64,000 nucleotides of DNA from Octopus sinensis (GCF_006345805.1 NC_043025.1:15686001-15750000), one strand, 5' to 3'. Numbered from the stretch's first letter, positions 43,194 through 63,180 are shown. Notes: generated by a model from the sequence alone, not told the origin. Translations and numbers: made by a program.

Positions 43194-43376
43194 TCAATCA
43201 TCTTCTTCTTCTTCGTCTCCATTTTCCTGTCTGTGCATCACTCCAAACAGCTCCTTGGAACTAAAGCCAGTTTTGTTGATAGCCATAATAGGTGTCATTG
43301 CAGACCTCATGCTGTTGTAGATCTTCGGGAAGAGGAGTTCTTGTGCTGCCAGCAGTTGCTTCATTCGGTGTCGTTC
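43194..43376 (-). CDS. TtcA-like thiolase-domain protein, last coding exon
   Basis: TTGCAG acceptor; ERHRMKQLLAAQELLFPKIYNSMRSAM...DEEEDD*; phase 0. Confidence 0.92.
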   Translation of the reverse strand, partial: ERHRMKQLLAAQELLFPKIYNSMRSAMTPIMAINKTGFSSKELFGVMHRQENGDEEEEDD

Positions 43377-43976
43377 CTGCAATAAAAGTCACATGACATT
43401 AACACATGATACCAGCCGTACAACAGAGGAGACAACAACAGAGGAAACTTCTACAACAGTTGGCCTGATGAACCACATCTCCTGTGGCCCACATCTTATA
43501 AAAGGTAACCCATGCTTGCTCTACATGAGGTAAGGCCATTTGGAAATAACAGCAAAAAAAAAAAGCAAAATACAGATGTACTGAGACCTAGGATTTGAAC
43601 TCAATTCTCTGAGTTATAACTCAAGTGCCATGAATGGACCACACGATTGTTGTTTATTTGCTCTGTTTATTAACCAAACAGCTCACAAAGGATCACACCA
43701 CGAAGAGTGGACAAAAAGGAATTTCCTCGGATTTTGCACTTTTTCTAGCGATAAAACCCAAAGAAGTTCACGTAAATCAAAGGCAGAGGCTTAGCAAGAT
43801 TCTGCTGGCTCCCACCTCCTTGCCCCTTGCTTCAAGAAAATCAAGGGATGAGTAAAAGCAGTTAAAGATATGTTGTCTTACTTTTGACCAAAGCAAACCA
43901 AAAATTTGAGAAGATTTCAATAAACTCACATAAACTCAATTTTCATTCAAGACGAAACTTGTTCTGGTCACTAGAA

Positions 43977-45460
43977 TTAACCCTTTCGTTACCAACCTGG
44001 CTGAAACCACCACTGGCTCTGGGTACAAATGTCTTCTTTTCATAAGTTTTGAATTAAAATCTCCCACCAAACCTTAGTCACAATTTATGTTCCTAACACT
44101 AGCTTAATGATAACCAAGTTATTTTACTAAATTCTTTGTTATATTTAAAGTAATTGAAAGAAACACAGAGCATCTCAGCAGAAATATTGTAACAAAATGG
44201 TTAAGATATATAATAGAGAAATAATTCTTAACCCTTTTGATACCAACCTGGCTGAAAACACCTCTGGTTCCTTAGTACAAATGTCTTGTTTTCAAAAGTT
44301 CTGAATTAAAATCTCCACCAAACCTTAGTCACAATTTATGTTCCTAACACTAGCTGAATGATAATTAAGTTATTTTACTAAATTCTTTGTTATATTTAAA
44401 GTAATTGAAAGAAACACAGAGCATCTCAACAGAAATATGGTAACAAAATGGTTAAGATATGTAATAGAGAAATAATTCTTAACCCTTTTGATACCAACCT
44501 GGCTGAAACCACCTCTGGTTCCTTAGTACAAATGTCTTGTTTTCAAAAGTTCTGAATTAAAATCTTCCACCAAACCTTAGTCACAATTTATGTTCCTAAC
44601 ACTAGCTGAATGATAATTAAGTTATTTTACTAAATTCTTTGTTATATTTAAAGTAATTGAAAGAAACACAGAGCATCTCAACAGAAATATGGTAACAAAA
44701 TGGTTAAGATATATAATAGAGAAATAATTCTTAACCCTTTTGATACCAACCTGGCTGAAACCACCTCTGGTTCCTTAGTACAAATGTCTTGTTTTCAAAA
44801 GTTCTGAATAAAATCTTCCACCAAACCTTAGTCACAATTTATGTTCCTAACACTAGCTGAATGATAATTAGTTATTTTACTAAATTCTTTGTTATATTTA
44901 AAGTAATTGAAAGAAACACAGAGCATCTCACAGAAATATGGTAACAAAATGGTTAAGATATATAATAGAGAAATAATTCTTAACCCTTTTGATACCAACC
45001 TGGCTGAAACCACCTCTGGTTCCTTAGTACAAATGTCTTGTTTTCAAAAGTTCTGAATAAAATCTTCCACCAAACCTTAGTCACAATTTATGTTCCTAAC
45101 ACTAGCTGAATGATAATTAAGTTATTTTACTAAATTCTTTTTTATATTTAAAGTAATTGAAAGAAACACAGAGCATCTCAACAGAAATATGGTAACAAAA
45201 TGGTTAAGATATATAATAGAGAAATAATTCTTAACCCTTTTGATACCAACCTGGCTGAAACCACCTCTGGTTCCTTAGTACAAATGTCTTGTTTTCAAAA
45301 GTTCTGAATTAAAATCTTCCACCAAACCTTAGTCACAATTTATGTTCCTAACACTAGCTGAATGATAACTAAGTTATTTTACTAGATTCTTTTGTTATAT
45401 TTAAAGTAATTGAAAGAAACACAGAGCATCTCAAAATAAATACAGTAACGAAAGGGTCAA
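43977..45460. repeat. Six tandem ~251-bp units, each a piggyBac-type MITE plus a 23-bp spacer
   Basis: Units start at 43981, 44232, 44483, 44735, 44984 and 45235. Each is TTAA-CCCTTT...AAAGGG/AAATGG-TTAA. Confidence 0.9.
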
Positions 45461-46325
45461 GTCATTAATGATCATAGAATTTAGACTGTATGAAAGTCCA
45501 TCTCTATATCCCAACTCTCTGCCAGGGAATATCTGAAAATCCACATCATCGTGATCACATGGATATTGATCGAATCCCTTGCAAGTTAACATGAGGTCTC
45601 CTAACGACAATTGTAAACTTCCTGTAATCAAGCTATCCTCAACCTGAAGAGTAATTTGCAGTTCTCCGCTCGTTTGGATAATTACTACTTCTGAGAGTCT
45701 GCTAGCTGGGAAACATATGTAGCCTGGACTTTATCTACTCCATTCCCTAATCTTGGATGTATGAGTGGGAGGGGATTAGTTTTTCCCGAAATAAATATAA
45801 AATGTTCATAAGTTTCATTTCCAACATGGTGCAGGTGTGGCTGTGTGGTAAGTAGCTTGCTTCCCAACCACATGGTTCTGAGTTCAGTCCCACTGCATGG
45901 CACCTTGGGCAAGTATCTCGGGTCAACCAAAGCCTCATGAGTGGATTTGGCAGAGGGAAACTGAAAGAACCCCACCGTGTGTGTGTGTCTTTGTATCGGT
46001 GTTTGTCCCCCACCATCACTTGTAAACCGCTGTTGGTGTGTTTACATCCCCATAACGTAGCAGTTTGGCTAAAGAGATTGAGAGTACCAGGTTTAAAAAC
46101 CCAAAATAAATCCTGGGGTTGATTCGTTTGATTAAAATTCATGATGGCTGTGCCCCAGCATGGCCACAGTCTAACGACTGTAACAAGATAACAGATAACA
46201 CATGCAGCCCCAGCCTAATCTGCAATAATCCTCCACCGTGAACCTGGATGATGTAATCCTAGATACACTGTGCTCAAAAGAAAAAAACACACCCACCACC
46301 CTCAATTCTATGACCACCATCTTAC

Positions 46326-46379
46326 CTTTGGTGCTTCGAAACATGCTGGACAATTCTCACTGATGACAGGAAGTTGATT
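46326..46379 (-). CDS. TtcA-like protein exon (second CXXC)
   Basis: CTGCAG / NQLPVISENCPACFEAPK / GTAAG; 54 bp, phase 0-0. Confidence 0.92.
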
Positions 46380-47520
46380 CTGCAGAGAGAGAGAGAGGAG
46401 AGTCACATGGTAGGTCACATGATGTCACTGGAGCTGCTGGCAAAGAGCCACATGTAAAGTAAATATCTATTTCTTTACAACCCACAAGGGGCTAAACACA
46501 GAGGGGACAAACAAGGACAGACAAACTGATTAAGTCGATTACATCGACCCCCAGTGCATAACTGGTACTTAATTTATCGACCCCGAAAGGATGAAAGGCA
46601 AAGTCAACCTCGGCAGAATTTGAACTCGGAACGTAACGACAGACGAAATACGGCTACGCATTTCGCCCAGCATGCTAACTTTTTGCCAGCTCGCCGCCTT
46701 CAATATATACCTGTGTGGTCCGGCCTGGAACCGGGTGCATGCTTCAATGAAGCAAGGATACTGGTCGGCCGGATAACCTGAACGAGTCTAGAAAATGTGA
46801 AACGTGTGATTTTTTGTGTGTTTTAAAAAAGAAAAAAGAATTCAGAACATTGTGTTGTTTAAGTAAGTGGTTTATTGCCTCATTGTGTTTTGGGGGAAAA
46901 AAGGGAAAAAGAACATTGTTTTAGAGAAGCAAAAGTCGGCGGGCGCTTTTCGTCTTCTCCCATCATCATCATTTTTGCATCACCATCCATGTCCAGCCTG
47001 CAAAGCTTCCATCTGTGTGATACCCTTGTGGCAAATTATATGAAAAAGAAGCTTGCTTCCCAACCACATGGCTTCAGGTTCAATCCCACCGTGTGGCACC
47101 TTGGACAAGCATCTTTAATATAGCCCTAAGCCAATGAAGTCCTTGTGGGTGGATTTAGGGCAGATGGAAACTGGAAGCAGTTCATTTACAATGTGAGGGT
47201 GTGTATGAGGGTGTATGTGCGAATGGGGGGAGGGGTGAATGTGTCTGTGTTTGTCCCCCATCACTACAGAGTGTGCTGGGTGCTTTTGGATGCCACCACC
47301 CCCACCTCACAGCACAAGTGCATTTACAAGGCACCAGCACAAGACTCAGCCTAAACGCTTTTACTACAGAGTACAGGTCTTCCTGAGTACAGCAAGGCAC
47401 CAGGCATCTCAGTCTATTGCCGTCTTGTCTGAAAGGTTAAGTGTCCTGAGGTTGCCCTTCAGCACATCGTCCCATGTCTTCCTGGATCTCCCACTTCCAC
47501 ACATTTTCTCTCTCTTTGTA

Positions 47521-47575
<55 letters not shown>

Positions 47576-47576
<1 letters not shown>

Positions 47577-47892
47577 GGGCGCGTGGCTTAGTGGTTAGGG
47601 CATTCGGCTCATGATCGTAAGGTTGTGAGTTCGATTCCCAGTGACGCGTTGTGTCCTTGAGCAAGACACTTTATTTCACGTTGCTCCACTCCACTCAGCT
47701 GGCAAAAATGAGTTGTACTTGTATTTCAAAGGGTCAGCCTTGTCACTCTCTGTGTCACGCTGATTATCCCCGAGAACTACGTTAAGGGTACACGTGTCTG
47801 TGGAATGCTCAGCCATTTGCACGTTAATTTCACGAGCAAGCTGTTCCGTTGATCGTATCAGCTGGGACCCTCGTCGTCGTAACCGGCGGAGT
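47576..47892 (+). mobile_element. tRNA-derived SINE
   Basis: GTGGCTTAGTGGTTAGGG...GTTCGATTCC head; tail shared with 25810-26190. Confidence 0.85.
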
Positions 47893-48349
47893 CTTTTTTT
47901 TTTTTATATATATATAAATTAAATTAGAGATAAAACCACTATTAGGCAAATCAAACAGTGAAAAACATAAACCAAGACATAAAAATAAAAATAATTAATA
48001 TAATATAGAAAATATAAAATTTAAATTATTTAGATTTAAAATTAAAATTATTAATTTATATTTATAAATTTTTATGAATTTTTATTTATTTTTTTTATTT
48101 TTTTTATTTTATTATTTTGTTATTTTATTTTATTTTATTATTTTTATTAAAAAGTTTAATATAAGATAAAAGTATATACACATCCTCATCATTATCATTT
48201 TAATGTCCTCCTCTCCATGCTTGCAGGGGTCATATGGAATTTATTGAGGGTGTATCTCTACAGTTAGATGTCCTTCCTGTTGCCAATGAATTCCATCTGA
48301 CCCATGCAAGCATGGAAAGGAGGACATAAAAATGATAATGATGAGGATG

Positions 48350-48404
<55 letters not shown>

Positions 48405-48733
48405 ATAAATAGTGAGGGATTACTAATGTAGGCAAAAATATTTCATAACCTTGCTGTTGGCACACCAGGCTAACAGTATTACTTAGATTTGTGAAGAGCC
48501 CCAGATAATCCTGTGGTAGGGTCCAAGGTTATGTTATAACCAGAAATGGCTCTGATGACAGTAGCATTAATTTTTTTACGTCATTCAATTTCGTTCCACT
48601 GATCAACAGAGTAGTTGAGTAAACCTATTAGTAATGAGTAAACCTATAAAGATGACCCGAAACAGCTGTAAGCCAAATTTTATCCAATAAAGGAAACATA
48701 TGTAATGACCGTCATTATTAACTTGTTTCTTAT

Positions 48734-48765
<32 letters not shown>

Positions 48766-48971
48766 GTAGCTGTTTGGTTAATAATTTTGCTTTTCAAGCC
48801 CAGTGCTTCAGGTTCAGTCCCACTTTGAGCCACCTTAGGTGTATGTTTACAATATAGACAAAAATCTATTCCAGGGATTTCAATTGAAAATGAACAAACA
48901 GACAGACAAATAGTCTGACCAACATAAAAATGGAGAAACAAATTGACCAACAGACAAATAGATGTTTTTAC

Positions 48972-49044
48972 CTTTTCAGCAAACCTTCGTAAGTTCTTTT
49001 CTCTGACATAAACCAAAGGTCGAATAACTCGGAGGTCGTTATCC
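48972..49044 (-). CDS. TtcA-like protein exon
   Basis: TTGCAG / (Q)DNDLRVIRPLVYVREKNLRRFAEK / GT; 73 bp, phase 2-0. Confidence 0.92.
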
Positions 49045-49612
49045 CTGCAAGACCAGAATTATACTATCATCATCATTATCATTCAATGTCCATTTCCCAT
49101 GCTGGCATGGGTTTGACACATGACAATTAAACACACAGGTCTCAGCTCAAATGTTAACCACATTAAACTCATACCATGGCTTGGACCCACAGGTTGTCCG
49201 TATTTCATGTCATAATACAAAGAGCACAGCAATAATAATAGGAGAAAAGGACATGGGCGTAACTTAATCCTGTATTCCAAATGTTACATATGTTTCAGTA
49301 TTCAGCAACAACATGACGTTACACAATAGATGTGTCCAGTACATGCAGCTTATAGAGCAAACATGGTTAGAAAAACATTATCAACAGAAACTTCAAAGTT
49401 TCAGCCAGTTAGCTGATAAAAGCTAGTAGGATGAAACTGCGAAGTCACTATCATCACCACTCGTCTGCTAGAAGTATAAATATTTACTCTACAAAAAGTA
49501 CTGAGTAATTCTTCAGTTTAATATAAAATTGTTTTTAAATATAACTTGACTTAAAAATTAATATACATATATTTATACACACACCAGAGACAGAAGATTG
49601 TATTGTACTCAC

Positions 49613-49675
49613 TGAACTGTGTAATGGGCCTTCATGGTCCTCATGATTCCATTGTGGAAGAAAGACATAAGGAAA
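49613..49675 (-). CDS. TtcA-like protein exon
   Basis: TTACAG / (S)FLMSFFHNGIMRTMKAHYTV(Q) / GTGAGT; 63 bp, phase 2-2. Confidence 0.92.
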
Positions 49676-49737
49676 CTGTAAAAGAGAAGAGAGAAAGATT
49701 TATATAACATAGAATATTATGTAACTTGTGGATGACA

Positions 49738-50150
49738 TAGTTATGTGGGGCTCACATTTTATAATACAGAGACTGTAACTAGAAAAGGTATAGATATGTG
49801 GGGGTCACATTTTGTAACACAGAGACTGTAACTAGAAAAGGCATAGATATGTGGGGCTCACATTTTGTAATATAGAGACTGTAACTAGAAAAGGCATAGA
49901 TATGTGGGGCTCACAATTTGTAATACAGAGACTGTAACTAGAAAAGGTATAGATATGTGGGGGTCACATTTTGTAATACAGAGACTGTAACTAGAAAAGG
50001 CATAGATATGTGGGGCTCACATTTTGTAATACAGAGACTGTAACTAGAAAAGGCATAGATATGTGGGGCTCACATTTTGTAATACAGAGACTGTAACTAG
50101 AAAAGGCATAGATATGTGGGGGTCACATTTTGCAATATACAGTGTAACTG
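49738..50150. repeat. 53-bp intronic minisatellite (~8 copies)
   Basis: Unit GATATGTGGGGSTCACATTTTGTAATACAGAGACTGTAACTAGAAAAGGCATA; period 53 (49793, 49846...). Confidence 0.92.
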
Positions 50151-50334
50151 TAGAAGATATAGTTATGTGGCAGTCATGCTTTATAATGCATGGACCACTG
50201 AAATATGGTTAATGCAAAACAGTTGATGTAGATAATGGTGGTGGTGATAATGATGATGACGACATGGGCTATAGTGATGAGGATGAGGATAGTGGAGGGA
50301 AATACGATGAAGGACTGTTAGTTTGAAACTTTAC

Positions 50335-50488
50335 CTTTCAGCAAGGTCGTCCAAGTGTTGCCCCAGGGACACAACATTGTAGCCCTCCCGTCGGGCACAC
50401 ATATAGATACGTCCCCGCTTCATACGACTACAGAAGCTGCAAATCGACTCACATTTGTACGGGAGGTTGGAGGCTGTGTCCATTATAC
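50335..50488 (-). CDS. TtcA-like protein exon (first CXXC and GxHxDD)
   Basis: TTCCAG / (G)IMDTASNLPYKCESICSFCSRMKRGRIYMCARREGYNVVSLGQHLDDLAE(S) / GT; 154 bp, phase 1-2. Confidence 0.93.
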
Positions 50489-52039
50489 CTGGAAGTAGTA
50501 GTAGTAGTAGTAGTGATAACAACAACAACAACAACAATAATTTCAAATTTTGGTACAAGGCGAACAATTCTGGGGGAGAGTCTAAGTCGATTACATCGAC
50601 CCTTGTACTCAACTGGTACTTACTTTATCAACTCCTTAAAGGATGAGAGGCAAAGCTGACCCATGGCAGAATTTGAACTCAGAACATAAAGATGGACAAA
50701 ATACGTATTTCTTTATTACCTACAAGGAGCTAAACATAGAGGGGACAAACAAGGACAGACATAGGTATTAAGTCGATTATATCGACCCCAGAGCATCACT
50801 GGTACTTAATTTATCGACCCCAAAAGGATGAAAGGCAAAGTCGACCTCTGCGGAATTTGAACTCAGAATGTAACGGCAGACGAAATACCTATTTCTTTAC
50901 TACCTACAAGGGGCTAAACACAGAGGGGACAAACAAGGACATACATAGGCATTAAGTCGATTATATCGACCCCAGAGCGTCACTGGTACTTAATTTATCG
51001 ACCCCGAAAGGATGAAAGGCAAAGTCGACCTCGGCGGAATTTGAACTCAGAACGTAACGACAAACGAAATATCGGTAAGCATTTCGCCCGGCATGCTAAC
51101 CAATCTGCCAGCTCACAGCCTTAACAATACCAACTGAATCCAAGGGAGGAAATTTTTGGAAGCAACACAGAATCGAAGGGAAGTAACCTCGTAACAGCTG
51201 CTAATTTTATCACGAAAATATTCTTTTCTTTTCTAAGCAGATGGCCCGAAATTTTTTTTGGGGTGGGGGGGCAGTCGATTAGATCAACTTCAGTACGGAA
51301 ATGGTACTTCATTTATCGACCCCGAAAGGATGAAAGGCAAAGTCGATCTCGGCGAAATTTGAACTCAGAACGTAGCAGCAGACAAAATACCTATTTCTTT
51401 ACTACCCACAAGGGGCTAAACACAGAGAGGACAAACAAGGACAATTGATTAAGTCAGTGCGTAGCTGGTACTTAATTTATCGACCCCGAAAGGATGAAAG
51501 GCAAAGTCGACCTCGGCAGAATTTGAACTCAGAATGTAACGGCAGACGAAATACCGCAAAGCATTTCGCCCGGCGTGCTACCGTTTCTGCCAGCTCATTG
51601 CTTTTTTTATCACCAAAATATTGTGGTAGGAATGCTATAAATTAATGGACAATCCTTTAGATCCGTCCAAATGGATTTCAGACGAGTTCGACCTCCATAA
51701 AGAGTGTTACCAGTGGAGAACATGCCTCCCTTTGTCTTTTATTTTCTATCTTTTACTCGTTTCAGTTTTTAGACTGTGGCCATGCTGGGGCACCACCTTG
51801 AAGGGCTCTTGTTGAACAAATCAACCCCAGGACTCATTTTTCATTAACTTTTTTTGCTCTCTTTTACGGAACCACTGTGTTAAAAGAGCGTAAACAAACC
51901 AACAGCTGTCAAGCAGTGGTGGGGACAAACCTAGCCTCAACGTTCATTGTTTTTCTTTTTTTATTTGTTTATTGGAATTGTTTCTTTATTTGACTTGACT
52001 ATATACATATATATAGATAGATATAGATATATAAATATA

Positions 52040-52340
52040 CTAGCAGTATCGCCCGCCGTTGCTTGGGTTTGTAAGGGAAATAACTATATAAGCATTTTTA
52101 GAGAGTTACTTCCCTTATATAAACCGAGCAAAAAATGCATTAAAAATGCGGAAAAATGATGGTAAATTTTTTTTTAAATCATAGACTCATCGTAGACACA
52201 CGCTAATACCCAGAAGGGCTCGATATGAATCACGACTATAAGATACCCGCTTTTGGTTAAACTGCACCGCAAAATGTGGGAGTAGTTACGAATCCAAATC
52301 GTAGGAGACAGACACACAACCTTACTTTTATATATAAAGA
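52040..52340 (-). mobile_element. Non-autonomous Helitron (Lep1-like); partial second copy at 52533-52636
   Basis: Minus strand begins A|TCTTTATATATAAAAG and ends with a GC-rich subterminal segment then CTAG|T, i.e. insertion between A and T. Confidence 0.7.
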
Positions 52341-52884
52341 TATACACAGTCTTCTAGTCTCAGATTTTAGTTGAATGATAATGAAATAGATAATATTTGG
52401 AAATAAATTATAACCCTATGATCTCCTCCCTCCACTGTGTTCCATGCCACTCTATAAATAAATTGTTCTCCTAGCTATTCCTGCTACAATAGCCACAACA
52501 TGAATTCTTTCCATCTTCTTGTTCTGTTAAAAGATACCCGGTTTTGGTTAAACTGCACCGCAAAATGTGGGAGTAGTTAGGAATCTAAATTGGAGTAGAC
52601 AGACACACACACAACTTCAGTTTTATATATAAAGATGTATATAGATTTATACATATTTATAGTAATCCCTTGACATATTGTGGTTCACCTGTCTCGGTTT
52701 ATTATCTAAGTTTACGTCAATTCGTCTGCGGTGTTGTTTTGCATTTATAATAAAATAAATATAAAGAAATTATAAAAATAATATTAAAATTATACACAAC
52801 ACAGTACTGTTACTACTTTGTTGATTTTCACCTACCACAGGTGGTTTAGGAGAGTAACACCTGTGATAGTCAAGGGATTACTGT

Positions 52885-53215
52885 CATCATCATCATTGTT
52901 CAACCGTGGTCGAGACAATGGAATTTACTATGTTACGCCAGACTTCACGGTCCATCATGGCATTACGGAGGTCCTGTTGCTGATGCCTGTATCCCTGGAG
53001 ATTACATCAGGGTAGGAGAGTGTGCGCCCTCTGGTATTGCGAGTAGATGGCTTCCAGAGGAGAAGAGGAGAAATTACCTCTTTTTCAGCTCTACAACAAT
53101 GTCCAGCAAACTGGACTCTCCTACCTTTCACAAGAGATGACACAGGTGGTAGTTTCCCATATATTTGCATTTTGGTTGGATGACGCTTCCACGAGAGATT
53201 TTGTACAATACTTAC
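52885..53215 (-). mobile_element. 3' fragment of an RTE-clade LINE
   Basis: NLSWKRHPTKMQIYGKLPPVSSLVKGRRVQFAGHCCR...LLLWKP...GR, followed by a (TGA)n tail. Confidence 0.8.
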
Positions 53216-53543
53216 AATACTTATGTATTACTGTTCAATACTTATGAAATCCACCCAGAAGGCTTTGGTCAGCCCAGGGCTATAATGAAGGCAAAAATGT
53301 ACAATCCTTGAAACCTCAAAGTTACAAGATCATACAAGACTGATTAAAAATTATATTTGACAGAATAATTTGAAAGGTAAGGGGTCAACCAAAGGGGTTA
53401 ACACCCTGTTGTTTGTATTCACTTGCATCCTTTGTACTCTAAGAGCAAAGTACAGGACAGCCTCCCTCCAAAAGGGTTGAAGCAATAACAACAATAATAA
53501 CATTAAAAAAAACCATAAAAACAAGTATGTTTGTGATACAAAC

Positions 53544-53661
53544 CTTGAGATTCAAAGAAATAGGGAACACCCAAACAGCTTAAATATTTCTTCAAGGGGC
53601 TGGGATTATAAGAAGGGGTCTGGGGATCAACCGTCACAGCACCAATATCAAAGTGAGTTCC
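53544..53661 (-). CDS. TtcA-like protein exon
   Basis: TTTTAG / [39 protein letters not shown](G) / GT; 118 bp, phase 0-1. Confidence 0.92.
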
Positions 53662-53938
53662 CTAAAATAAAAAAGAATAAGAAAGAGAAAAATATTTTTC
53701 TAAAAATTTTAAAAAGGAGATGTGGGAGGGAATTTGTAAAGAGTAAGATGGAAGAGGTTTTGGTGGTGGTGGTGGCAGTGGTGGTGGTGGTGTGGTGGTG
53801 GTGGTGATGGTGGTTGTGGTGGTGATGGTGGTGATGGTGGTGGTGGTGGTGGAGGTAGTAGTAGTAGTGGTGGTAGTGATGGCGGTAGTAGTAGTAGTAA
53901 CAATTATAGATAATAATAACAATAAAATAGGATTTTAC

Positions 53939-54061
53939 CTTGCTTTTAGCGTAGAACTGGTATTGGTGAAGAATATGCAGCATAGAGAGGGAATCCTTAC
54001 CCCCAGAGAGGCACAACAACACTCGATCCCCGTCTTGTATCATATTGTAGTCTGTAATGGC
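53939..54061 (-). CDS. TtcA-like protein exon (PP-loop)
   Basis: TCCAG / [41 protein letters not shown] / GT; SGGKDS motif; 123 bp, phase 0-0. Confidence 0.95.
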
Positions 54062-54184
54062 CTGGAGCAATAGAGATAGAAATACGTAAACATTACAGTA
54101 AAAGAAGAGTGTGGTGGGGGTCTGATGAGGGCAGGTCCTTCGTATCTGAAGACCAAGAGGAAAGAGCAGCATGCCCTCATGTCA

Positions 54185-55273
54185 TCATCATCATTTAACA
54201 TCCGTTCTCCATGCTAGCATGGGTTGAACGATTTTGACTGAGGGCTAGCGAACCAGATGGCTGCACCAGGCTCTGATCTTGATCTGGCAGAGTTTCTACA
54301 CCTGGGTGCCCTTCCTAACGCCAACCACTCCGAGAGTGTAGAGGGTGCTTTTTACGTGCCACCGGCACAGGTGCCAGGGGAGTCTGGTTGCGGCCACGAT
54401 CGGTTGGTACTTTTTACATGCCACCGGCACAGGTGCCAGGGGAGTCTGGTAGCAGCCACGATCAGTTGGTACTTTTTACGTGCCACCGGCACAGTTCCAG
54501 GAAGTCTGTAGCGGCCACGATCGGTTTGTGGTGCTTTTTACGTGCCACCGGCACAGGTGCCAGGGGAGTCTGGTAGCAGTCACGATCGGTTGGTGCTTTT
54601 TACATGCCACCGGCACAGGTGCCAGGGGAGTCTGGTAGCAGCCACGATCAGTTGGTACTTTTTACGTGCCACCGGCACAGGTGCCAGGGAAGTCTGGTAG
54701 CGGCCACGATCGGTTGGTGCTTTTTACGTGCCACCGGCACAGGTGCCAGGGGAGTCTGGTAGCAGTCACGATCGGTTGGTGCTTTTTACATGCCACCGGC
54801 ACAGGTGCCAGGGGAGTCTGGTAGCGGCCACGATCAGTTGGTGCTTTTTAGTGCCACCGGCACAGGTGCCAGGGAGTCGGTAGCAGTCACGATCGGTTGG
54901 GCGTTTTTAAACATGCCACCGGCACAGGTGCCAGGGGAGTCTGGTAGCATCACGATCAGTTGGTACTTTTTACGTGCCACCGGCACAGGTCCAGGGGAGT
55001 CTGGTAGCAGTCACGATCGTTGGTGCTTTTAACGTGCCACCGGCACAGGTGCCAGGAGTCTGGTAGCGGCCACGATCAGTTGGTGCTTTTTACGTGCCAC
55101 CGGCACAGGTGCCAGGGGAGTCTGGTAGCAGTCACGATCGGTTGGTGCTTTTTACATGCCACCGGCACAGGTGCCAGGGGAGTCTGGTAGCAGTCACGAT
55201 CAGTTGGTACTTTTTACGTGCCACCGGCACAGGTGCCAGGGGAGTCTGGTAGCGGCCACGATCAGTTGGTGCT
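54185..55273. repeat. RTE-type 3'-end repeat carrying a 62-bp minisatellite (~15 copies, 54345-55273)
   Basis: Unit GTGCCACCGGCACAGGTGCCAGGGGAGTCTGGTAGCRGYCACGATCRGTTGGTRCTTTTTAC; period 62 (54361, 54423, 54485, 54547). Related dispersed copies at about 33065, 39880, 40310, 41820, 56095-56680 and 61560. Confidence 0.88.
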
Positions 55274-57219
55274 TAGCGGTTCGGCAAAAGAGACCGATAG
55301 AATAAGTACTGGGCTTACAAAGAATAAGTCCCGCGGTCAAGTTGCTTGATCAAAGGCAGTGCTCCAGCATGGCTGCAGTTAAATGACTGGAACAAGTAAA
55401 AGAGAGAGAAAGAGAGATATAACTTCCTTACATATTTTTATTTTTATTCTTATTTTTACTGAAGATATTTTAGAATTTGTAGGATTAAGTTGGATCCATT
55501 AATAATAATAATAATAAAAAGAGGGAAATAACGTGAGGATGCACAGGTGGATTATGTATTAGGTATAGCCTGGTAAAACAAACCACCAGTGCCGAAACAC
55601 GTGTAGCGTTGATTAATATTATCTTCTTTCCCCACAGACTAATAACAGGTAAGGTATATATATATATATCTCTTTTACTCTTTACTCTTTTACTTGTTTC
55701 AGTCATTTGACTGCGGCCATGCTGGAGCACCGCCTTTAGTCGAGCAAATCGACCCCGGGACTTATTCTTTGTAAGCCCAATACTTATCCTATCAGTCTCT
55801 TTTGCCAAACCGCTAAGTGATGGGGACGTAAACACACCAGCATCAGTTGTCAAGCAATACTAAGGGGACAAAGACAGACACACAAACACATACACACACA
55901 CATATATATATATACATATATACGACAGGCTTCTTTCAGTTTCCGTCTACCAAATCCACTCACAAGGCATTAGTCGGCCCGATGCTATAGCAGAAGACAC
56001 TTGCCCAAGATGCCACGTAGTGGGACTGAACCCGGAATCATGTGGTTGGTTAGCAAGCTACTTACCACACAGCCACTCCTGTGCCTATCATCATCATCAT
56101 CATCATTTAACGTCCGCTTTCCATGCTAGCATGGGTTGGATGGTTCAACTGGGGTTTGGGGAGCCCGAAGGCTGCACCAGGCCAGTCAGATCTGGCAGTG
56201 TTTCTACAGCTGGATGCCCTTCCTAACGCCAGCCAGTCCGAGAGTGTAGTGGGTACTTTTATGTGCCACCGACACAGGTGCCAGACGAGGCTGGCAGACG
56301 GCCATGATCGGATGGTGTTTGTTACGTGCCCACAGCACGGAGGCCAGTCGATGCGGTACTGGCTACGGCCACGTTCGGATGGTTTTCTTGTGTGCCACCG
56401 GCACTGGTACCACAAAGATACAAATTCCATTGATGTTCATCTATTTTGATTTGTTTTGATTTTGATTTTCACTTGCCTCAACAGGTCTTCACAAGTGTCA
56501 CAAGAAGGAAGGTATGCACAGGTGGACTGACTACGTCCCAGGTAGGAGCCACGGGTTATGGCCTGACTAGTCTTGCCGGGTCTTCGGATGGTGTTTTTAT
56601 GTGCCACCGACACAGATGCCAGATGAGGCTGGCAAACGGCCACGATCGGATGGTGTTTGTTATGTGCCCACAGCACGGAGGCCATATATTATTAAAATAT
56701 GTTTAAATAATTTATAATTAATTCTAATGTACTTTATTCTTATTGTATGTTATAGTAGGTTTTAAAATGCTTACATTATCAAATTAGTATTTTGGATAGA
56801 ATTTCCTATGTGTACTCCAGGAAATAAGGTTGTCCTGAAATTGAAGCTGTGGTCCTATTGGTAAAATCCCAAATTTGTAATAATAATATTATAATTGATA
56901 CTGTTTGCTTTGCATTAGTAAAGTGTAAAATCGTATATATCCTGATAACTTGGAATAATTATTATTCCTTAAGATTAAAAAAAATATTCATAAATATTAT
57001 ATATATATATATATACAATGGGCTTCTTTCAGTTTCTGTCTACCAAATCCGCTCACAAGGCTTTGGTCAGCCTGAGGCTGTAGTAGAAGACACTTGCGCA
57101 AGGTGCCAAGCAGTGGGACTGAACCCGGAACCATGTGGTTAGAAATGCATTCATATTAAAAATATGAAGTCATACAGACACACATGTATTTATATATCTG
57201 GATGTATATATGTATGTAT

Positions 57220-57290
<71 letters not shown>

Positions 57291-57298
57291 CACACACA

Positions 57299-57333
<35 letters not shown>

Positions 57334-57343
57334 CTTTACTTAC

Positions 57344-58819
57344 CTCAATGACTGGAGTGAACAACTCTTTCGGTGGTGAAACCCACAAACTGCCCTCCTT
57401 GGTCACTTTCCGCTGGTCAGTCTTCACCTTTGCTTTGCGGAGACAACACTGGGTCATCTGTGGCTCTGACTTAGGACCCACAGCCCCAGTACCGGTGACA
57501 CCCGGTCCTTTTTCAGACAGTGGTGTCATCGAGGGTTTCATCAACGTTGTAGTTTCATTAAGGGACCTGCAACAGCAGTCCCTACATTCCTTATTTGTAT
57601 CATTATTGATGTCATCATCATTATTGTTGCCATGACAACTGCACTGTGTTGCAGCATGTGTTGCATTGTTGTTGTTACTGCAATGGCAACAGCCACTCTG
57701 CTGCGCTACTGCAAGTCCAACACTATTAACCTCCGCTCCAGTTTTATCCCTCACCTCCTCCGGGGTTTCATCGCAACCCTCCTCTCTTTCGTCCCGATTA
57801 CTCGGGAAGGAACTGTTCGCATTAGCCACCCCTTTCTCCTCCTCCTCTTTTCCCTTCCCCTCTGCGGTCGTTGCTGTCGATCTCTGGAACTTCGATGAGG
57901 TCTTTAGTTTGTAATTTTCAAAGCTAGAGATTTGGCGATTAGGATTAAAATTATAACTGGGTATGTGATTACGATTAAGATTGGAGTTGTTAAAACTAGG
58001 ATTAGAGTTATGATTGGGATTATGAATAGGGTTAACACTGGGATTAAAATTAGGATTGTGATTTAAATTAAGGTTAGGATTATGGCTAGTGTTAAGATTA
58101 GGATTAGGATTTAAGTTAAGACTAGGATTATGATAAAACTTAAGATTAGGACTGACATTAGTGGCATCAGAAAGATGAGAATTTGTAACTGGATTTGGAT
58201 AGAGATGTGGATTAAGAGGATTATAAGCAGTTTCGAGAGTAGTACCAACTGGAATGCTGGTAGGATTAACATTCAAACTGTCAGATTCATGTCCACTGTC
58301 AGACAAGACCAGTGCTTTGTCCAAACTGACTGAAAGATCATCACAATGACCAAATGAAAATCCCCTCTCCAGGAAATTCTTAATCGATTTACAGAACTCT
58401 TCACTATGGCTCATACCAGGGTCACATCGAGGACCCTCACCAATCGCATTTTGTGTCGCCATCTGTGGCAGACTTTCAGCAATTTTGTTGGTAACACCTT
58501 CTTCTTCACGTTTTGGCTTAACTTCTATTTCTTCTTCCACTTCTTCGTCTCCCGGTTTTCCATCTCCTCTCCCTCCTCCTTCTTCTCCAACATCATCATT
58601 TCTGTTATTTTCCGCGACCGCAGTGAGATCAGAACTTTCTTCCTGTCGGTTGGTGTCTGCAAAAGATTTTGGAACAAACGGTAGTGCATCTAATGGGGTG
58701 AAGTTTGTGAAGGTCCCTTCAGAGATACAGGTGTAGGCTTCACATGGCAGCAGGAACCACCTCAGGTGCTGGGTGCCGTTCTCAAAGAGAAGACTTTGAT
58801 CAGGAAGTGATGCTTTCAT
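57344..58819 (-). CDS. TtcA-like protein, 1476-bp exon with a long low-complexity insert
   Basis: TTGCAG / MKASLPDQSLLFENGTQHLRWFLLPCEA...WVSPPKELFTPVIE / GTAAGT. 492 open codons, phase 0-0, splicing in frame to the PP-loop exon. Confidence 0.88.
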
Positions 58820-59132
58820 CTGCAAAGATAAATTAAGAGGCTGTATGTGTGTGTGTATGATTAGATACACTCGTATTTATATATACGTAAACACACATAC
58901 ACATATACTCTTTTTACTCTTTTACTTGTTTCAGTCATTTGACTGCGGCCATGCTGGAGCACCGCCTTTAATCAAGTAACTCAACCCCGGGACTTATTCT
59001 TTTGTAAGCCCAGTACTTATTCTATCGATCCCTTTTGCCAAACCGCTAAGTAACGGGGACATAAACACACCAACATCAGTTGTCAAGCAATGCTAGGGGG
59101 ACAAACACAGACACACAAACATACACACACGC

Positions 59133-59185
<53 letters not shown>

Positions 59186-59752
59186 TACGATGGGCTTCTT
59201 TCAGTTTCCATCTACCAAATCCACTCACAAGACTTTGGTCAGCCTGAGGCTATAGTAGAAGACACTTGCCCAAGGTACCACGCAGTGGGACTGAACTCGG
59301 AACCATGTGGTTGGTAAACAAGCTACTTACCACACAGCCACTCCTGTTTATAAATCCATATATACTGTTTCACAATTGGCGTTGGTTTGTTTACATCCCC
59401 ATAAATTAGCAGACCGGCAAAAGAGAGGGGATAGAATAAACAACAAGCTTGAAAGCGAGTAAAAGATTCTTCAAGGTTGTGCCCCAGCATGGCCACAATC
59501 TAATGACTGAAACAAATAAAAAGATAAAAACTAAACACATTCACCATTCTAAGTCCATCTTAAAACCGTATTTCTATATTTTAACAGAAAATCTTTGAGT
59601 TCTTTCATAAAGCTTTTCTATATTGTAGAAGATACGAGCCGCAGGGGATAAGTGGTACACAGCTGGGATTGAACCAGAAACCTTCATGTTAGTACAAAGT
59701 GGTAGTTCTGATGCAAAGACTGACTGTTTATTAATCAGAGAGCGTTACATAC

Positions 59753-59797
59753 CTTCTCAGCAGTCTTGAACAAGTCTTTCGCTTCTCTTAAACACTC
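59753..59797 (-). CDS. TtcA-like protein exon
   Basis: TCCAG / ECLREAKDLFKTAEK / GTATGT; 45 bp, phase 0-0. Confidence 0.75.
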
Positions 59798-59946
59798 CTG
59801 GAGTTTCATGGATGATGGAGAGACAGAAGAAGAGAGAAAGGAGAACATGATTTAGTATTGTATGATGGTGGTGGTGGTGGGTGTGGTGGTAGTGGTGGTG
59901 ATGGAGGTGCTGGGTTTGATGTTGTTGTTGTTGATGGTGAACCTAC

Positions 59947-60054
59947 CTGGTAATCTGGTACTGAAGAATTGCCGTAGCCATTCTTTTGAGATTTGTATTT
60001 CATGGCACCTGAGGAATAGGAAATATTGCCAAGCCATTTTCTGTCTTTGTACAC
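59947..60054 (-). CDS. TtcA-like protein exon (most 5' exon found in the window)
   Basis: TTCCAG / VYKDRKWLGNISYSSGAMKYKSQKNGYGNSSVPDYQ / GTAGGT; 108 bp, phase 0-0. It has an acceptor, so further exons lie upstream, probably beyond 64000. Confidence 0.78.
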
Positions 60055-60068
60055 CTGGAAACATCATC

Positions 60069-60112
<44 letters not shown>

Positions 60113-60131
60113 TAATAATAATAATAATAAC

Positions 60132-60750
60132 TCAGATACCAGGAAACCCCAAAATGGCAGAAATTCAAAAGATAGTGCTCATGGGAACTGCTCATATCCT
60201 ACGCAAAATACTTTCTATGTAATCTCAAGGTTTAAAACAAACATAATATTCCTATGTATTTTTTTTTAGACATTTACTAGTACAACACCAAAAAAAAACA
60301 ACAAATATATGGCACACTAGGCATAACAACAACGTGAACTTCCAACCTGTTGTCTCTTGAGGTCTCTGGGTGAGATTTGGAGCCAACTTGTACAATCATA
60401 AAGCAAAAGTCAAACATAGAATAATAAAAATAATAATAATAATAATACAAAGACCTGGAAATAGAGGTAACTAGAATGTGGAATCTAATAAGAGAAACAA
60501 TTCCTATCATAGTAGGTGCATTAGGCATGATAAAAAAATATTCAGACAAATACATAACAAAAACACCAGGACTTACAAACACATATAACATACAGAAAAT
60601 TGCACTACTAGGCACTGCACACATCCTACGCAGAACACTTTCAATACAATAACCATCAGAGCATCACAACAAATCACAGCACATACCCAAGGCACACAGA
60701 GCTGCGCTCGGTAGTGAAGTGAAAGCATGCTATAAAAATAAAACTACTGA
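60132..60750 (+). mobile_element. Two Dong/R4-type 3' ends in (TAA)n
   Basis: IPGNPKMAEIQKIVLMGTAHILRKILSM* (from about 60135) and YKDLEIEVTRMWNL...GTAHILRRTLSIQ* (60446-60750), flanked by TAA repeats. Confidence 0.78.
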
Positions 60751-60838
60751 ATAATAATAATAATAATAACAATAATAATAATGATGATAATGATAATAAT
60801 AATATTAATAATATAATAATAATAATAATAATAATAAT

Positions 60839-60876
<38 letters not shown>

Positions 60877-61336
60877 CAACAACAATCCTTTCTATTATAG
60901 GCACAAGGGGCCTGAAATTTTGTTGGAGGGGGTAAGTCAATTACATCAACCCCAGTGTTTCACTGGTACTTAATTTATCAACCTCGAAAGGATGAAAAGC
61001 AAAGTCCACCTCGGTGGAATTTGAACTCAGAACATAAAGACAGATGAAATACTGCTAAGCATTTCACCCAGTGTGCTAACAATTCTGCCAGCTCACTGCC
61101 TTAATAATAATCCTTTCTATTACAGGCAGGAGGCCAGAAATTCTTGGTGAGGGGTGGGGCTAGTTGATTACATCAACCCCAGTGCTCAACTGGTACTTAT
61201 TTCATCGACCCCAGAAAGATGAAAGGCAAAGTCAACCTCAGCGAAATTTGTACTCGGAACATAGCAACAGGTGAAATACTGCTAAGCATTTCATTCAGCG
61301 TGCTAACGATTCTGCCAGCTCGTCAACTTCACTGCC

Positions 61337-61401
<65 letters not shown>

Positions 61402-62827: not shown

Positions 62828-63031
62828 AATAATAATAATAATAATAAATAATAATAATAATAATAAATAATAATAATAATAATAAATAATAATAATAAAT
62901 AATAATAATAAATAATAATAATAATAATAATAATAAATAATAATAATAAATAGTAATGATAATGGTAATATAATAATAATAATATAATAATAATAATAAT
63001 AATAAATAATAATAATAATAATAATAAATAG

Positions 63032-63062
<31 letters not shown>

Positions 63063-63144: not shown

Positions 63145-63180
<36 letters not shown>

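What the first reader, a model, noticed from the sequence alone, without database searches (positions are those of the whole stretch)
43194..60054. Intron-containing animal gene encoding a bacterial-TtcA-like tRNA thiolase domain
Seen: ten minus-strand exons with GT-AG sites and consistent phases. They encode SGGKDS (PP-loop), CSFCSRMKRG, GQHLDD, VIRPLVYVRE and ENCPAC, then a short acidic tail with no C-terminal zinc finger. Established: this two-CXXC layout matches bacterial TtcA, the Fe-S enzyme that makes 2-thiocytidine at tRNA position 32 using IscS-derived sulfur. It does not match CTU1/Ncs6/TtuA, which have extra zinc-finger CXXC motifs. I know of no s2C32 in animal cytosolic tRNAs, where m3C32 is the usual C32 mark. 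Inference: the upstream blocks (KDRKWLGNISY, LRWFLLP) resemble my recollection of uncharacterised invertebrate and protist proteins with an N-terminal class-V aminotransferase/cysteine-desulfurase-like domain. That domain would lie outside this window. If so, this is a self-contained sulfur-donor plus thiolase fusion with an unknown substrate.
Basis: partly seen in the sequence, partly recalled or inferred. Interest (0 to 1): 0.78.

Follow-up and report, generated by a model that had tools for sequence, protein, structure and literature searches.

The report
Octopus desulfurase–TtcA tRNA thiolase gene
The window holds the last ten exons of an octopus gene that fuses a cysteine-desulfurase-like sulfur donor to a bacterial-type TtcA tRNA thiolase; a 2026 preprint already describes this fusion in molluscs and links it to the first 2-thiocytidine found in a eukaryotic tRNA, so the finding is correct but not new.

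Summary
Ten minus-strand exons (60054 to 43194), all GT-AG and phase-consistent, encode 798 aa. Every quoted motif is present.

- **TtcA domain.** The C-terminal 267 aa are TtcA-like. The NCBIfam TtcA model scores 216 bits, against 52 for TtuA and 32 for NcsA. There are no zinc fingers.
- **Fusion.** The Octopus bimaculoides orthologue (LOC106878996, 1280 aa) carries Aminotran_5 at residues 34-395 and the PP-loop at 1039-1208. Those upstream exons are not in the window.
- **In-window blocks.** KDRKWLGNISY and LRWFLLP belong to a conserved, folded extension of the desulfurase module. One 1476-nt exon joins that extension to the TtcA N-terminus.
- **Distribution.** The fusion occurs from sponges to amphioxus and tunicates. 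Its TtcA domains form one clade nested among short gammaproteobacterial TtcA-like proteins.
- **Selection.** dN/dS against O. bimaculoides is 0.04 in the TtcA exons.
- **Prior report.** A bioRxiv preprint (10.64898/2026.09.27.754811) reports s2C32 in Aplysia cytosolic tRNA-Lys(UUU) and names this fusion, in Cephalopoda too, as the likely synthase. Nobody has tested the enzyme.

My additions:
- The desulfurase is SufS-type, with its catalytic Cys identified.
- The fusion has a single origin.
- The RefSeq octopus model is truncated by an assembly gap.

The parts
59947..60054 (-). Exon 1 in the window (phase 0 to 0): VYKDRKWLGNISYSSGAMKYKSQKNGYGNSSVPDYQ. It belongs to the conserved C-terminal extension of the desulfurase module. 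It has no start codon, so the gene continues upstream of the window.
   Evidence: Acceptor TTTCCAG|GTG and donor CAG|GTAGGT. R, W, L, Y and G of the motif are >=90% conserved in 89 fusion proteins. The RefSeq O. bimaculoides model lacks the first 14 residues because of an assembly gap.
59753..59797 (-). Exon 2: ECLREAKDLFKTAEK, a helix of the extension. Its Cys is the equivalent of Aplysia Cys588.
   Evidence: Splice sites. Matches P0121 residues 512-528. The Cys column holds Cys in 63 of 89 sequences. The Aplysia numbering was checked.
57344..58819 (-). Exon 3 (1476 nt, one open frame). It runs from MKASLPDQSLLFENGTQHLRWFLLP (end of the desulfurase extension), through about 430 aa of low-complexity linker (acidic, N/P-rich and Cys-rich stretches, including QCCLRKAK at 57428-57451), to WVSPPKELFTPVIE (N-terminal helix of the TtcA domain).
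   Evidence: Donor GAG|GTAAGT. 83% identical to P0121. dN/dS is 0.42 overall and 0.15 for the first 60 codons. This single exon physically joins the two modules.
53939..54061 (-). Exon 4: [41 protein letters not shown], carrying the PP-loop ATP pyrophosphatase motif SGGKDS.
   Evidence: Pfam PF01171. SGGKDS is invariant in 89 orthologues.
53544..53661 (-). Exon 5: [39 protein letters not shown](G).
   Evidence: TVDP and other residues are invariant.
50335..50488 (-). Exon 6: IMDTASNLPYKCESICSFCSRMKRGRIYMCARREGYNVVSLGQHLDDLAE. It holds the first CXXC (equivalent to E. coli TtcA Cys122/Cys125, [4Fe-4S] ligands) and the GQHLDD motif.
   Evidence: C812 and C815 (tick numbering) are invariant. Ligand assignment in E. 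coli comes from PMC4081106.
49613..49675 (-). Exon 7: (S)FLMSFFHNGIMRTMKAHYTV.
   Evidence: 100% identical to P0121.
48972..49044 (-). Exon 8: (Q)DNDLRVIRPLVYVREKNLRRFAEK.
   Evidence: RP and VRE are conserved.
46326..46379 (-). Exon 9: NQLPVISENCPACFEAPK. It holds the second CXXC; its second Cys is equivalent to E. coli TtcA Cys222, the third cluster ligand.
   Evidence: N-C-P-x-C-F is invariant. PMC4081106.
43194..43376 (-). Exon 10: ERHRMKQLLAAQELLFPKIYNSMRSAMTPIMAINKTGFSSKELFGVMHRQENGDEEEEDD, then the stop codon. It forms the C-terminal helices and an acidic tail, with no zinc finger.
   Evidence: 97% identical to P0121. Acidic tails are general in the family, with a mean of 4.4 D/E in the last 12 residues.

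Best explanation
The window carries the 3' two-thirds of the Octopus orthologue of the metazoan SufS-like cysteine desulfurase-TtcA fusion gene. This is the gene called 'IscS-TtcA' in Aplysia (LOC101861551) and LOC106878996 in O. bimaculoides.

**Shown**
- The ten-exon structure.
- The TtcA-type PP-loop / CXXC / CXXC domain.
- A single exon that links this domain to the conserved extension of the desulfurase module.
- The desulfurase domain in the near-identical orthologue, with its PLP lysine (SPHKF) and a Cys in RGGCACAGP that aligns with the catalytic Cys of SufS.
- Strong purifying selection on the TtcA exons.

**Inferred mechanism**
1. The PLP domain removes sulfur from L-cysteine and forms a persulfide on the RGGCAC Cys.
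2. The TtcA domain holds a [4Fe-4S] cluster on three Cys (CSFC plus the second Cys of CPAC), leaving one free iron site.
3. The PP-loop uses ATP to adenylate O2 of cytidine 32 in a cytosolic tRNA. tRNA-Lys(UUU) is the one known case.
4. Sulfur passed in cis from the desulfurase, directly or through a conserved linker Cys, replaces the adenylate and gives s2C32.

The long octopus linker is a poorly constrained tether.
For: - Gene model and motifs.
- TtcA assignment: NCBIfam NF007972 at 216 bits over 251 of 295 positions, far above TtuA and NcsA. Pfam PF01171.
- Fusion architecture: P0121 is 99% identical over the TtcA domain and carries Aminotran_5 at 34-395. About 100 orthologues from many phyla carry both Pfam domains.
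- One mRNA: contigs of 3.2-3.7 kb that encode 990-1090 aa carry both domains, so they behave as single transcripts (e.g. P0125, P0140, P0162).
- Desulfurase type: SufS family is the best NCBIfam hit. SufS PDB chains match at 2e-22, with SGHK/SPHK and RAGHHCAQP/RGGCACAGP aligned. The AlphaFold model (pLDDT 82, pTM 0.75) matches SufS/Nfs2/CsdB at target TM 0.82-0.87.
- Invariant residues across 89 fusions: both Cys of RGGCAC, SGGKDS, both Cys of each CXXC.
- Selection: dN/dS is 0.04 over 256 TtcA codons against O. bimaculoides.
- Product: s2C32 was mapped in Aplysia cytosolic tRNA-Lys(UUU), and the fusion was the only TtcA homologue reported from that paper's blastp search of the Aplysia genome. 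P0137 matches that paper's residue numbering exactly and is 71% identical to the window's domain.
- Chemistry precedent: E. coli TtcA needs a [4Fe-4S] cluster on Cys122/125/222, ATP-Mg, and cysteine plus a cysteine desulfurase in vitro (PMC4081106).
Against: - No enzyme of this fusion family, nor of its closest bacterial subfamily, has been assayed. The characterised TtcAs (E. coli, Salmonella, P. aeruginosa) are only about 34% identical.
- The domain scores below NCBIfam's equivalog cut-off (216 against 272). The desulfurase is far below SufS's (115 against 475).
- The link between s2C32 and the gene in Aplysia is correlative, and s2C has not been looked for in any octopus.
- The desulfurase exons are outside this window, so for this species the fusion is inferred from exon 3 and from the congeneric orthologue.
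- Type II desulfurases normally need a separate acceptor protein (SufE/SufU/CsdE). None is evident here.
- I could not read the model's coordinates, so I did not measure how close the two active sites are.
Confidence: 0.75

Rival explanations
1. The gene is the same, but the TtcA-like domain thiolates something other than C32 of tRNA: another position, another RNA, or a small molecule. On this view the Aplysia s2C32 comes from a different enzyme.
For: The domain is only about 34% identical to characterised TtcAs and scores below the equivalog cut-off. Its nearest bacterial relatives (Acidithiobacillus, Thiotrichales, Thiodiazotropha) are uncharacterised.
Against: The whole TtcA model aligns end to end with all catalytic motifs. 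The preprint's blastp search of Aplysia with E. coli TtcA reported only this protein. CTU1-type enzymes have a different architecture.
Confidence: 0.12
2. The fused desulfurase does not donate the sulfur that ends up in RNA. It builds or repairs the oxygen-labile [4Fe-4S] cluster of its own TtcA domain (self-maturation), or the protein is cleaved in the linker into two independent enzymes.
For: E. coli TtcA's cluster is oxygen-sensitive and is reconstituted with cysteine plus a desulfurase. The linker is long, predicted disordered and weakly constrained. The preprint raises cleavage as a possibility. Stand-alone paralogues of the desulfurase exist.
Against: The fusion has been kept from sponges to chordates with an open frame through every linker, which argues for a benefit of physical coupling. 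In the in vitro E. coli system the same cysteine/desulfurase pair supplies the transferred sulfur. The two roles do not exclude each other.
Confidence: 0.2
3. The TtcA-like sequence is bacterial contamination, a recent horizontal insert or a dead pseudogene in the assembly.
For: It is 49-58% identical to gammaproteobacterial proteins.
Against: Nine spliceosomal introns with GT-AG sites. Introns full of animal repeats. An orthologous locus with the same exon structure in O. bimaculoides. dN/dS of 0.04. All eukaryote domains form one clade that roughly follows animal taxonomy.
Confidence: 0.01

Closest known systems
   Same: Orthologue. It has the same domain order (desulfurase, conserved extension, variable linker, TtcA) and the same motifs (SxHK, RGGCACAGP, KDRKWL, [FL]RWFLLP, SGGKDS, CSFCSRMKRG, NCPAC). 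Its TtcA domain is 71% identical. It is proposed as the s2C32 synthase of cytosolic tRNA-Lys(UUU).
   Different: The linker differs in sequence and length; octopus has about 430 aa with N/P-rich and Cys-rich low-complexity runs. The preprint compared the N-domain with IscS and could not place the catalytic Cys. Here it aligns as a SufS-type (type II) enzyme, with the Cys450 equivalent as the catalytic residue. No activity has been shown for either protein.
E. coli / Salmonella / P. aeruginosa TtcA (tRNA-cytidine(32) 2-sulfurtransferase)
   Same: PP-loop SGGKDS, central CXXC followed by R-x-[KR]-RG, a later CXXC, and a [4Fe-4S] cluster on three Cys. It is ATP-dependent and takes sulfur from cysteine through a desulfurase.
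   Different: About 34% identity. It is a stand-alone protein of about 300 aa, and its desulfurase (IscS, type I) acts in trans and is encoded elsewhere. The octopus domain scores 216 bits against the 272-bit equivalog cut-off and falls in a different clade.
Short TtcA-like proteins of sulfur-oxidising Gammaproteobacteria (Acidithiobacillus, Thermithiobacillus, Thiotrichaceae, Ca. Thiodiazotropha)
   Same: These are the closest prokaryotic relatives, at 49-59% identity over the whole domain, with the same C-x-x-C ... ENCPAC layout and an often acidic tail. The eukaryote clade nests among them.
   Different: Stand-alone, about 250 aa, and uncharacterised. No desulfurase gene lies within 3 kb. 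Sampling was limited to best hits and pattern matches, so the donor lineage is not established.
TtuA / NcsA / Ncs6-CTU1 (U54 and U34 2-thiolases)
   Same: Same PP-loop [4Fe-4S] thiolase superfamily. They are the best solved-structure relatives by sequence (TtuA, E about 1e-9).
   Different: They carry N- and C-terminal zinc-finger CXXC pairs, act on uridine, and use TtuB/URM1-type thiocarboxylate carriers. HMM scores are only 52 and 32 bits. None of these features is present here.
SufS / CsdA / plastid Nfs2 (type II cysteine desulfurases)
   Same: This refers to the upstream domain of the orthologue. It shares the fold (TM 0.82-0.87), the PLP lysine and the position of the catalytic Cys.
   Different: About 21% identity. 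The motif is RGGCACAGP instead of RxGHHCAQP. It has an added, conserved C-terminal extension of about 170 aa (the KDRKWLG and LRWFLLP blocks seen in the window), no recognisable SufE/SufU partner, and is fused to its client.

Membership tests
TtcA (tRNA-cytidine(32) 2-sulfurtransferase) | PP-loop ATP-pyrophosphatase motif SGGKDS | tested here: met
   SGGKDS lies in exon 4. Pfam PF01171 E = 1e-12.
TtcA (tRNA-cytidine(32) 2-sulfurtransferase) | Central CXXC (E. coli Cys122/Cys125) and a later CXXC whose second Cys (Cys222) is the third [4Fe-4S] ligand | tested here: met
   CSFCSRMKRG in exon 6 and ENCPAC in exon 9. All four Cys are invariant in 89 orthologues. E. coli ligands come from PMC4081106. 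Equivalence rests on the HMM alignment over positions 22-272.
TtcA (tRNA-cytidine(32) 2-sulfurtransferase) | Score at or above the curated equivalog cut-off of NCBIfam NF007972 | tested here: not met
   216.2 bits against a cut-off of 272. It is the best-scoring family by a wide margin, but the protein is a diverged subfamily rather than an E. coli-type equivalog.
TtcA (tRNA-cytidine(32) 2-sulfurtransferase) | Forms s2C at position 32 of tRNA; binds a [4Fe-4S] cluster | not testable with these tools
   The only support is indirect: s2C32 in Aplysia tRNA-Lys(UUU), with the orthologous fusion as the TtcA homologue reported there.
TtuA / NcsA / CTU1 (Ncs6) | Additional zinc-finger CXXC...CXXC pairs at the N- and C-termini; family HMM match | tested here: not met
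   No CXXC pair follows ENCPAC, and the tail is acidic. TtuA scores 52 bits (cut-off 450) and NcsA 32 bits (cut-off 500). I did not build a joint tree with TtuA/CTU1 sequences.
Metazoan desulfurase-TtcA fusion (Aplysia LOC101861551 type) | One polypeptide with an N-terminal Aminotran_5 domain, a conserved extension, a linker and a C-terminal TtcA-like domain | tested here: met
   In the window, exon 3 is one open frame from LRWFLLP (extension) to the TtcA N-terminus. The congeneric orthologue P0121 has Aminotran_5 at 34-395 and the PP-loop at 1039-1208. The Aminotran_5 exons themselves lie outside the window.
Metazoan desulfurase-TtcA fusion (Aplysia LOC101861551 type) | Orthology: family-specific motifs and clade membership | tested here: met
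   KDRKWL, LRWFLLP, CSFCSRMKRG and NCPAC are shared. The window sequence sits inside the eukaryote clade (SH-aLRT 100) next to O. bimaculoides.
Type II (SufS/CsdA) cysteine desulfurase - upstream domain of the orthologue | PLP-binding lysine and catalytic Cys in the C-terminal-domain loop; type II fold | tested here: met
   SPHKF aligns with SGHKM, and RGGCACAGP with RAGHHCAQP of SufS. Both Cys of RGGCAC are invariant. Foldseek target TM is 0.82-0.87 to SufS/Nfs2/CsdB. This was tested on orthologues, not on the window.
Type II (SufS/CsdA) cysteine desulfurase - upstream domain of the orthologue | Score at or above the SufS family cut-off (TIGR01979); a partner acceptor SufE/SufU/CsdE | tested here: not met
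   115 bits against a cut-off of 475. No acceptor domain was recognised by Pfam in the fusion. Desulfurase activity itself cannot be tested here.

The most novel reading that the evidence does not exclude
The fusion is a self-sufficient cytosolic sulfur-mobilising tRNA thiolase that arose once before the animal radiation. It takes sulfur straight from free cysteine and passes it in cis to its own [4Fe-4S] site, independently of the mitochondrial NFS1 and URM1/MOCS3 routes. It would use a built-in shuttle in place of SufE: the second, invariant Cys of RGGCAC and/or the semi-conserved linker motif Cys-[P/L]-x-x-[K/R]-[K/R] (QCCLRKAK in the window), about 25 residues before the TtcA domain. If so, s2C32 would be a widespread but overlooked anticodon-loop modification of invertebrate cytosolic tRNAs.
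Probability: 0.3. Interest if true: 0.7.

Novelty: already known. Interest (0 to 1): 0.45.

Why it matters
s2C was thought to be restricted to bacteria and archaea. An animal enzyme that makes it would add a new anticodon-loop modification to eukaryotic cytosolic translation. That holds all the more for an enzyme with its own cysteine desulfurase, kept from sponges to amphioxus.

It would also add a second, cytosolic route of sulfur mobilisation beside NFS1. That much has now been proposed for Aplysia, so this window does not open the question.

What it does provide:
- a clean octopus gene structure, including an exon that the reference annotation loses in an assembly gap;
- evidence of strong constraint on the TtcA exons;
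- a sharper, testable model: a SufS-type donor, the catalytic Cys identified, candidate relay cysteines, and a single origin of the fusion.

The enzyme's activity, substrates and sulfur path remain untested in any species.

Tried and rejected
1. From the first homology search I provisionally concluded there was no desulfurase domain, because tick P0004 and other 380-450 aa 'TtcA' proteins start at or just before the KDRKWLG block. I rejected this after the length-matched search showed they are truncated models of 850-1300 aa fusions.

2. I looked for the upstream exons in 60055-64000. tblastn with P0121 residues 1-490 and sensitive blastn with the O. bimaculoides upstream region found nothing except repeats. 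Those exons are therefore beyond the window.

3. I tested whether the acidic tail is a CIA-targeting C-terminal tripeptide [LIM][DES][WF]. Only 3 of 118 orthologues match and the octopus does not, so I dropped the idea.

4. I tested whether bacterial relatives sit next to a desulfurase gene, as a possible operon precursor of the fusion. None does within 3 kb in 43 loci.

5. I found no obvious N-terminal mitochondrial presequence by eye in 16 full-length orthologues. They share a conserved RKFYxxP start instead. This is weak evidence, because no predictor was run.

6. tRNA and Rfam scans of the window found nothing. Four longer ORFs elsewhere in the window have no Pfam match.

7. The AlphaFold model's coordinates are not exposed, so I could not measure the distance between the two active sites. 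I do not interpret pTM 0.75 beyond 'domains and extension are folded'.

8. A literature search for TtcA plus Aminotran_5 or fusion terms found no earlier description than the 2026 preprint.

Full report
**1. Observation**

The window is animal DNA. It is repeat-rich, with 20-50% GC and long microsatellites and satellites.

Reading the minus strand around each block gave a ten-exon model. The exons are 60054-59947, 59797-59753, 58819-57344, 54061-53939, 53661-53544, 50488-50335, 49675-49613, 49044-48972, 46379-46326 and 43376-43194.
- All introns are GT-AG, several with strong donors such as GTAAGT and GTGAGT.
- Phases are consistent and there is no internal stop.
- The product is 798 aa, with TGA at 43196-43194.
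- An in-frame stop sits three codons upstream of the first acceptor and no ATG is available, so the gene starts further upstream.

**2. The C-terminal domain**

The last 267 aa match Pfam PP-loop PF01171. NCBIfam's TtcA model NF007972 aligns over positions 22-272 of 295 at 216 bits. TilS-N, TtuA and NcsA score 57, 52 and 32 bits. The score is below the TtcA equivalog cut-off of 272, so this is a diverged TtcA-like subfamily and not an E. coli-type equivalog.

The best solved structures by sequence are TtuA proteins, at E about 1e-9. The layout is SGGKDS, then C-x3-CSFCSRMKRG, then GQHLDD, then ENCPAC, then an acidic tail, with no flanking zinc-finger cysteine pairs. In E. coli TtcA the [4Fe-4S] ligands are Cys122, Cys125 and Cys222. 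Activity there requires ATP-Mg and cysteine plus a cysteine desulfurase (PMC4081106). The equivalent cysteines here are invariant across 89 orthologues.

**3. The fusion**

A first search limited to proteins of similar length returned animal proteins annotated TtcA (Limulus, ticks, spiders, copepod, Ascaris) and bacterial proteins at 55-59% identity. Some of the animal entries begin at the KDRKWLG block, which suggested there was no upstream domain. That was wrong.

A search with the full 798-aa model, scored on the TtcA region, returned about 120 proteins of 800-1380 aa. Nearly all carry both PF00266 (Aminotran_5) and PF01171. They come from sponges, placozoans, cnidarians, molluscs, annelids, a brachiopod, a nemertean, echinoderms, hemichordates, amphioxus, tunicates, chelicerates, crustaceans, several insects and one non-animal EukProt entry (Nk52).

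The top hit is Octopus bimaculoides LOC106878996 (P0121, 1280 aa). It is 99% identical over the TtcA domain. Its domain order is Aminotran_5 at 34-395 and PP-loop at 1039-1208. A second search with the desulfurase half added tardigrades, a rotifer, flatworms, Daphnia, Ciona and Toxocara. Many hits sit on 3.2-3.7 kb contigs that are barely longer than the coding sequence. These behave as transcripts, so the two domains are on one mRNA.

**4. What of the fusion is in the window**

tblastn of P0121 against the window matches residues 491-1280 only. The O. bimaculoides locus (L044, gene span 19.4 kb) is about 88% identical in nucleotides to the window. The protein model is 86% identical to P0121 over 789 aa. 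The window therefore comes from a different Octopus species.

In O. bimaculoides the preceding exon (QYRFNPETGEWRHKDLQ) lies about 585 bp upstream of exon 1. In the window, homology stops about 400 bp upstream of exon 1, and repeats plus a (TAA)n tract fill the rest to 64000. That exon lies beyond the window end.

The window still shows the fusion directly. KDRKWLGNISY (exon 1), ECLREAKDLF (exon 2) and LRWFLLP (start of exon 3) belong to a conserved extension of about 170 aa that follows the desulfurase domain in all orthologues. Some stand-alone paralogues also keep the [FL]RWFLLP block. Exon 3 runs in a single open frame from LRWFLLP to WVSPPKELFTPVIE, the N-terminal helix of the TtcA domain.

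**5. The desulfurase module (tested on orthologues)**

- NCBIfam's best hit is the SufS family, at 115 bits and far below its cut-off.
- SufS PDB chains match at about 2e-22. The PLP lysine aligns (SPHKF against SGHKM). The second Cys of RGGCACAGP aligns with the catalytic Cys of RAGHHCAQP.
- An AlphaFold2 model of the tick orthologue, built with an 89-sequence alignment, has pLDDT 82 and pTM 0.75.
- In that model the extension (residues 600-660, including LRWFLLP) has pLDDT 85-96, and the linker (670-698) is disordered.
- Foldseek places the N-domain with SufS, plastid Nfs2 and CsdB at target TM 0.82-0.87.

**6. Evolution**

A maximum-likelihood tree used 55 TtcA-like domains.
- All eukaryote sequences form one clade (SH-aLRT 100), with arthropods and lophotrochozoans grouping roughly as expected.
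- That clade nests among short TtcA-like proteins of sulfur-oxidising Gammaproteobacteria.
- The Moraxellaceae TtcA homologues sampled at 33-35% identity form a distant clade. That identity is similar to the 34% the preprint reports against E. coli TtcA.
- Sampling was restricted to best hits and pattern matches, so I make no claim about the donor lineage.
- Nk52 falls inside the animal polytomy, so its meaning is open.

No desulfurase gene flanks the bacterial homologues.

Between the two octopuses, dN/dS is 0.04 for the 256 TtcA codons. It is 0.42 for the linker exon, or 0.15 for that exon's first 60 codons. The enzyme domain is under strong constraint and the linker is a loosely constrained tether.

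**7. What is already published**

A bioRxiv preprint of 28 Sept 2026 (10.64898/2026.09.27.754811) reports three things.
- It maps s2C to position 32 of Aplysia cytosolic tRNA-Lys(UUU), the first s2C reported in a eukaryote.
- It identifies LOC101861551 (1177 aa, CsdA plus TtcA-like domains) as the likely synthase.
- It reports the fusion in 28 mollusc species, including Cephalopoda, and beyond.

P0137 in my searches reproduces the preprint's residue numbers exactly: Lys301, Cys448/450 and Cys588. The kind is therefore already described, although no activity, knock-out or cofactor analysis exists.

My additions:
- The donor is SufS-type, not IscS-type. This explains why the authors could not align the IscS catalytic Cys, and it points to the Cys450 equivalent.
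- The 'linker' begins with a conserved, folded extension.
- The fusion has a single origin and occurs across Metazoa.
- The nearest prokaryotic subfamily is identified.

**8. Mechanism**

The most likely mechanism, with shown and inferred steps marked, is given under Best explanation. The main uncertainty is how sulfur moves between the two modules. Type II desulfurases normally use a separate acceptor protein, and none is recognisable here.

Candidate in-cis relays are:
- the first Cys of the invariant CAC pair;
- the Cys in ECLREAK (Cys in 63 of 89 sequences);
- a Cys followed by basic residues about 25 residues before the TtcA domain (Cys in 61 of 79 sequences; QCCLRKAK in the window, CPLxKK in many phyla).

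These candidates are hypotheses only.

**9. Verdict**

The gene is a real, selected octopus gene. It is an orthologue of a fusion that was publicly described shortly before this scan, so it is already known as a kind, while its biochemistry is still open.

Noticed in passing
window 1-20057: One satellite array with a 107-bp unit and about 188 copies (79% matches, with 214/321-bp higher-order periodicity). It has a strong positive GC skew and runs off the start of the window.
   Followed up: partly
L044 about 12740-12827 (O. bimaculoides CM046630.1); window 60017-60054: The O. bimaculoides reference has a run of N exactly over the 5' part of exon 1. The RefSeq model LOC106878996 therefore uses an internal AG and lacks the conserved VYKDRKWLGNISY. 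The window supplies the intact exon.
   Followed up: yes
window 43977-45461, 49736-50137, 50583-51071, 54344-55274: There are tandem arrays inside introns of the gene: 251 bp x 5.9, 53 bp x 7.6, 184 bp x 2.6 and 62 bp x 15. Dispersed repeats shared with other parts of the window make these introns much longer than in O. bimaculoides. The last ten exons span 16.9 kb here, against 19.4 kb for the whole gene there.
   Followed up: partly
window 60055-64000: The intron upstream of exon 1 is at least 3.9 kb here, filled with repeats and a (TAA)n tract at 62827-64000. In O. bimaculoides it is about 585 bp.
   Followed up: yes
window 57428-57451 (QCCLRKAK) and 59792-59794 (Cys of ECLREAK): Two semi-conserved cysteines lie outside the catalytic domains. 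One is a Cys followed by basic residues about 25 aa before the TtcA domain (Cys in 61 of 79 sequences; CPLxKK in many phyla, CEDLKCF in crustaceans). The other is the Aplysia Cys588 equivalent (63 of 89). They may act as sulfur relay sites, or the first may be a basic tRNA-binding or NLS-like patch.
   Followed up: partly
window about 57970-58255 (inside exon 3): An Asn/Pro-rich low-complexity run (NPNLNLNHNPNFNPSVNPIHNPNHNSNP...) and a Cys-rich run (GCCHCS...CSCH...CRDCCC) occur in the octopus linker. Both are kept in frame in both octopus species but evolve fast, with dN/dS about 0.5.
   Followed up: partly
P0299, P0302, P0304, P0307, P0318 and others: Many invertebrates also have a stand-alone paralogue of the desulfurase module (650-790 aa, 47-50% identical, RGGCACAGP kept, some with [FL]RWFLLP). 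It is annotated 'probable cysteine desulfurase' and its function is unknown.
   Followed up: partly
P0001, P0004, P0005, P0018, P0019, P0031: Public animal proteins named 'TtcA' or 'tRNA-cytidine(32) 2-sulfurtransferase' of 245-450 aa are truncated gene models of the fusion. For example, tick P0004 is internal to P0153.
   Followed up: yes
P0211 (EukProt 'Nk52', 1130 aa): A non-animal entry carries the complete fusion with all motifs (RGGCLCAGP, KERKWL, YAWFLYP). From memory, Nk52 is the nucleariid Parvularia atlantis; I did not check this here. In the tree it falls inside the unresolved animal clade. The fusion may therefore predate animals, or this may be contamination or gene transfer.
   Followed up: partly
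L044 1-1720: In O. bimaculoides the gene's upstream neighbour, on the opposite strand, is an ABC1-domain (ADCK-like) kinase gene. It is not in the window.
   Followed up: no
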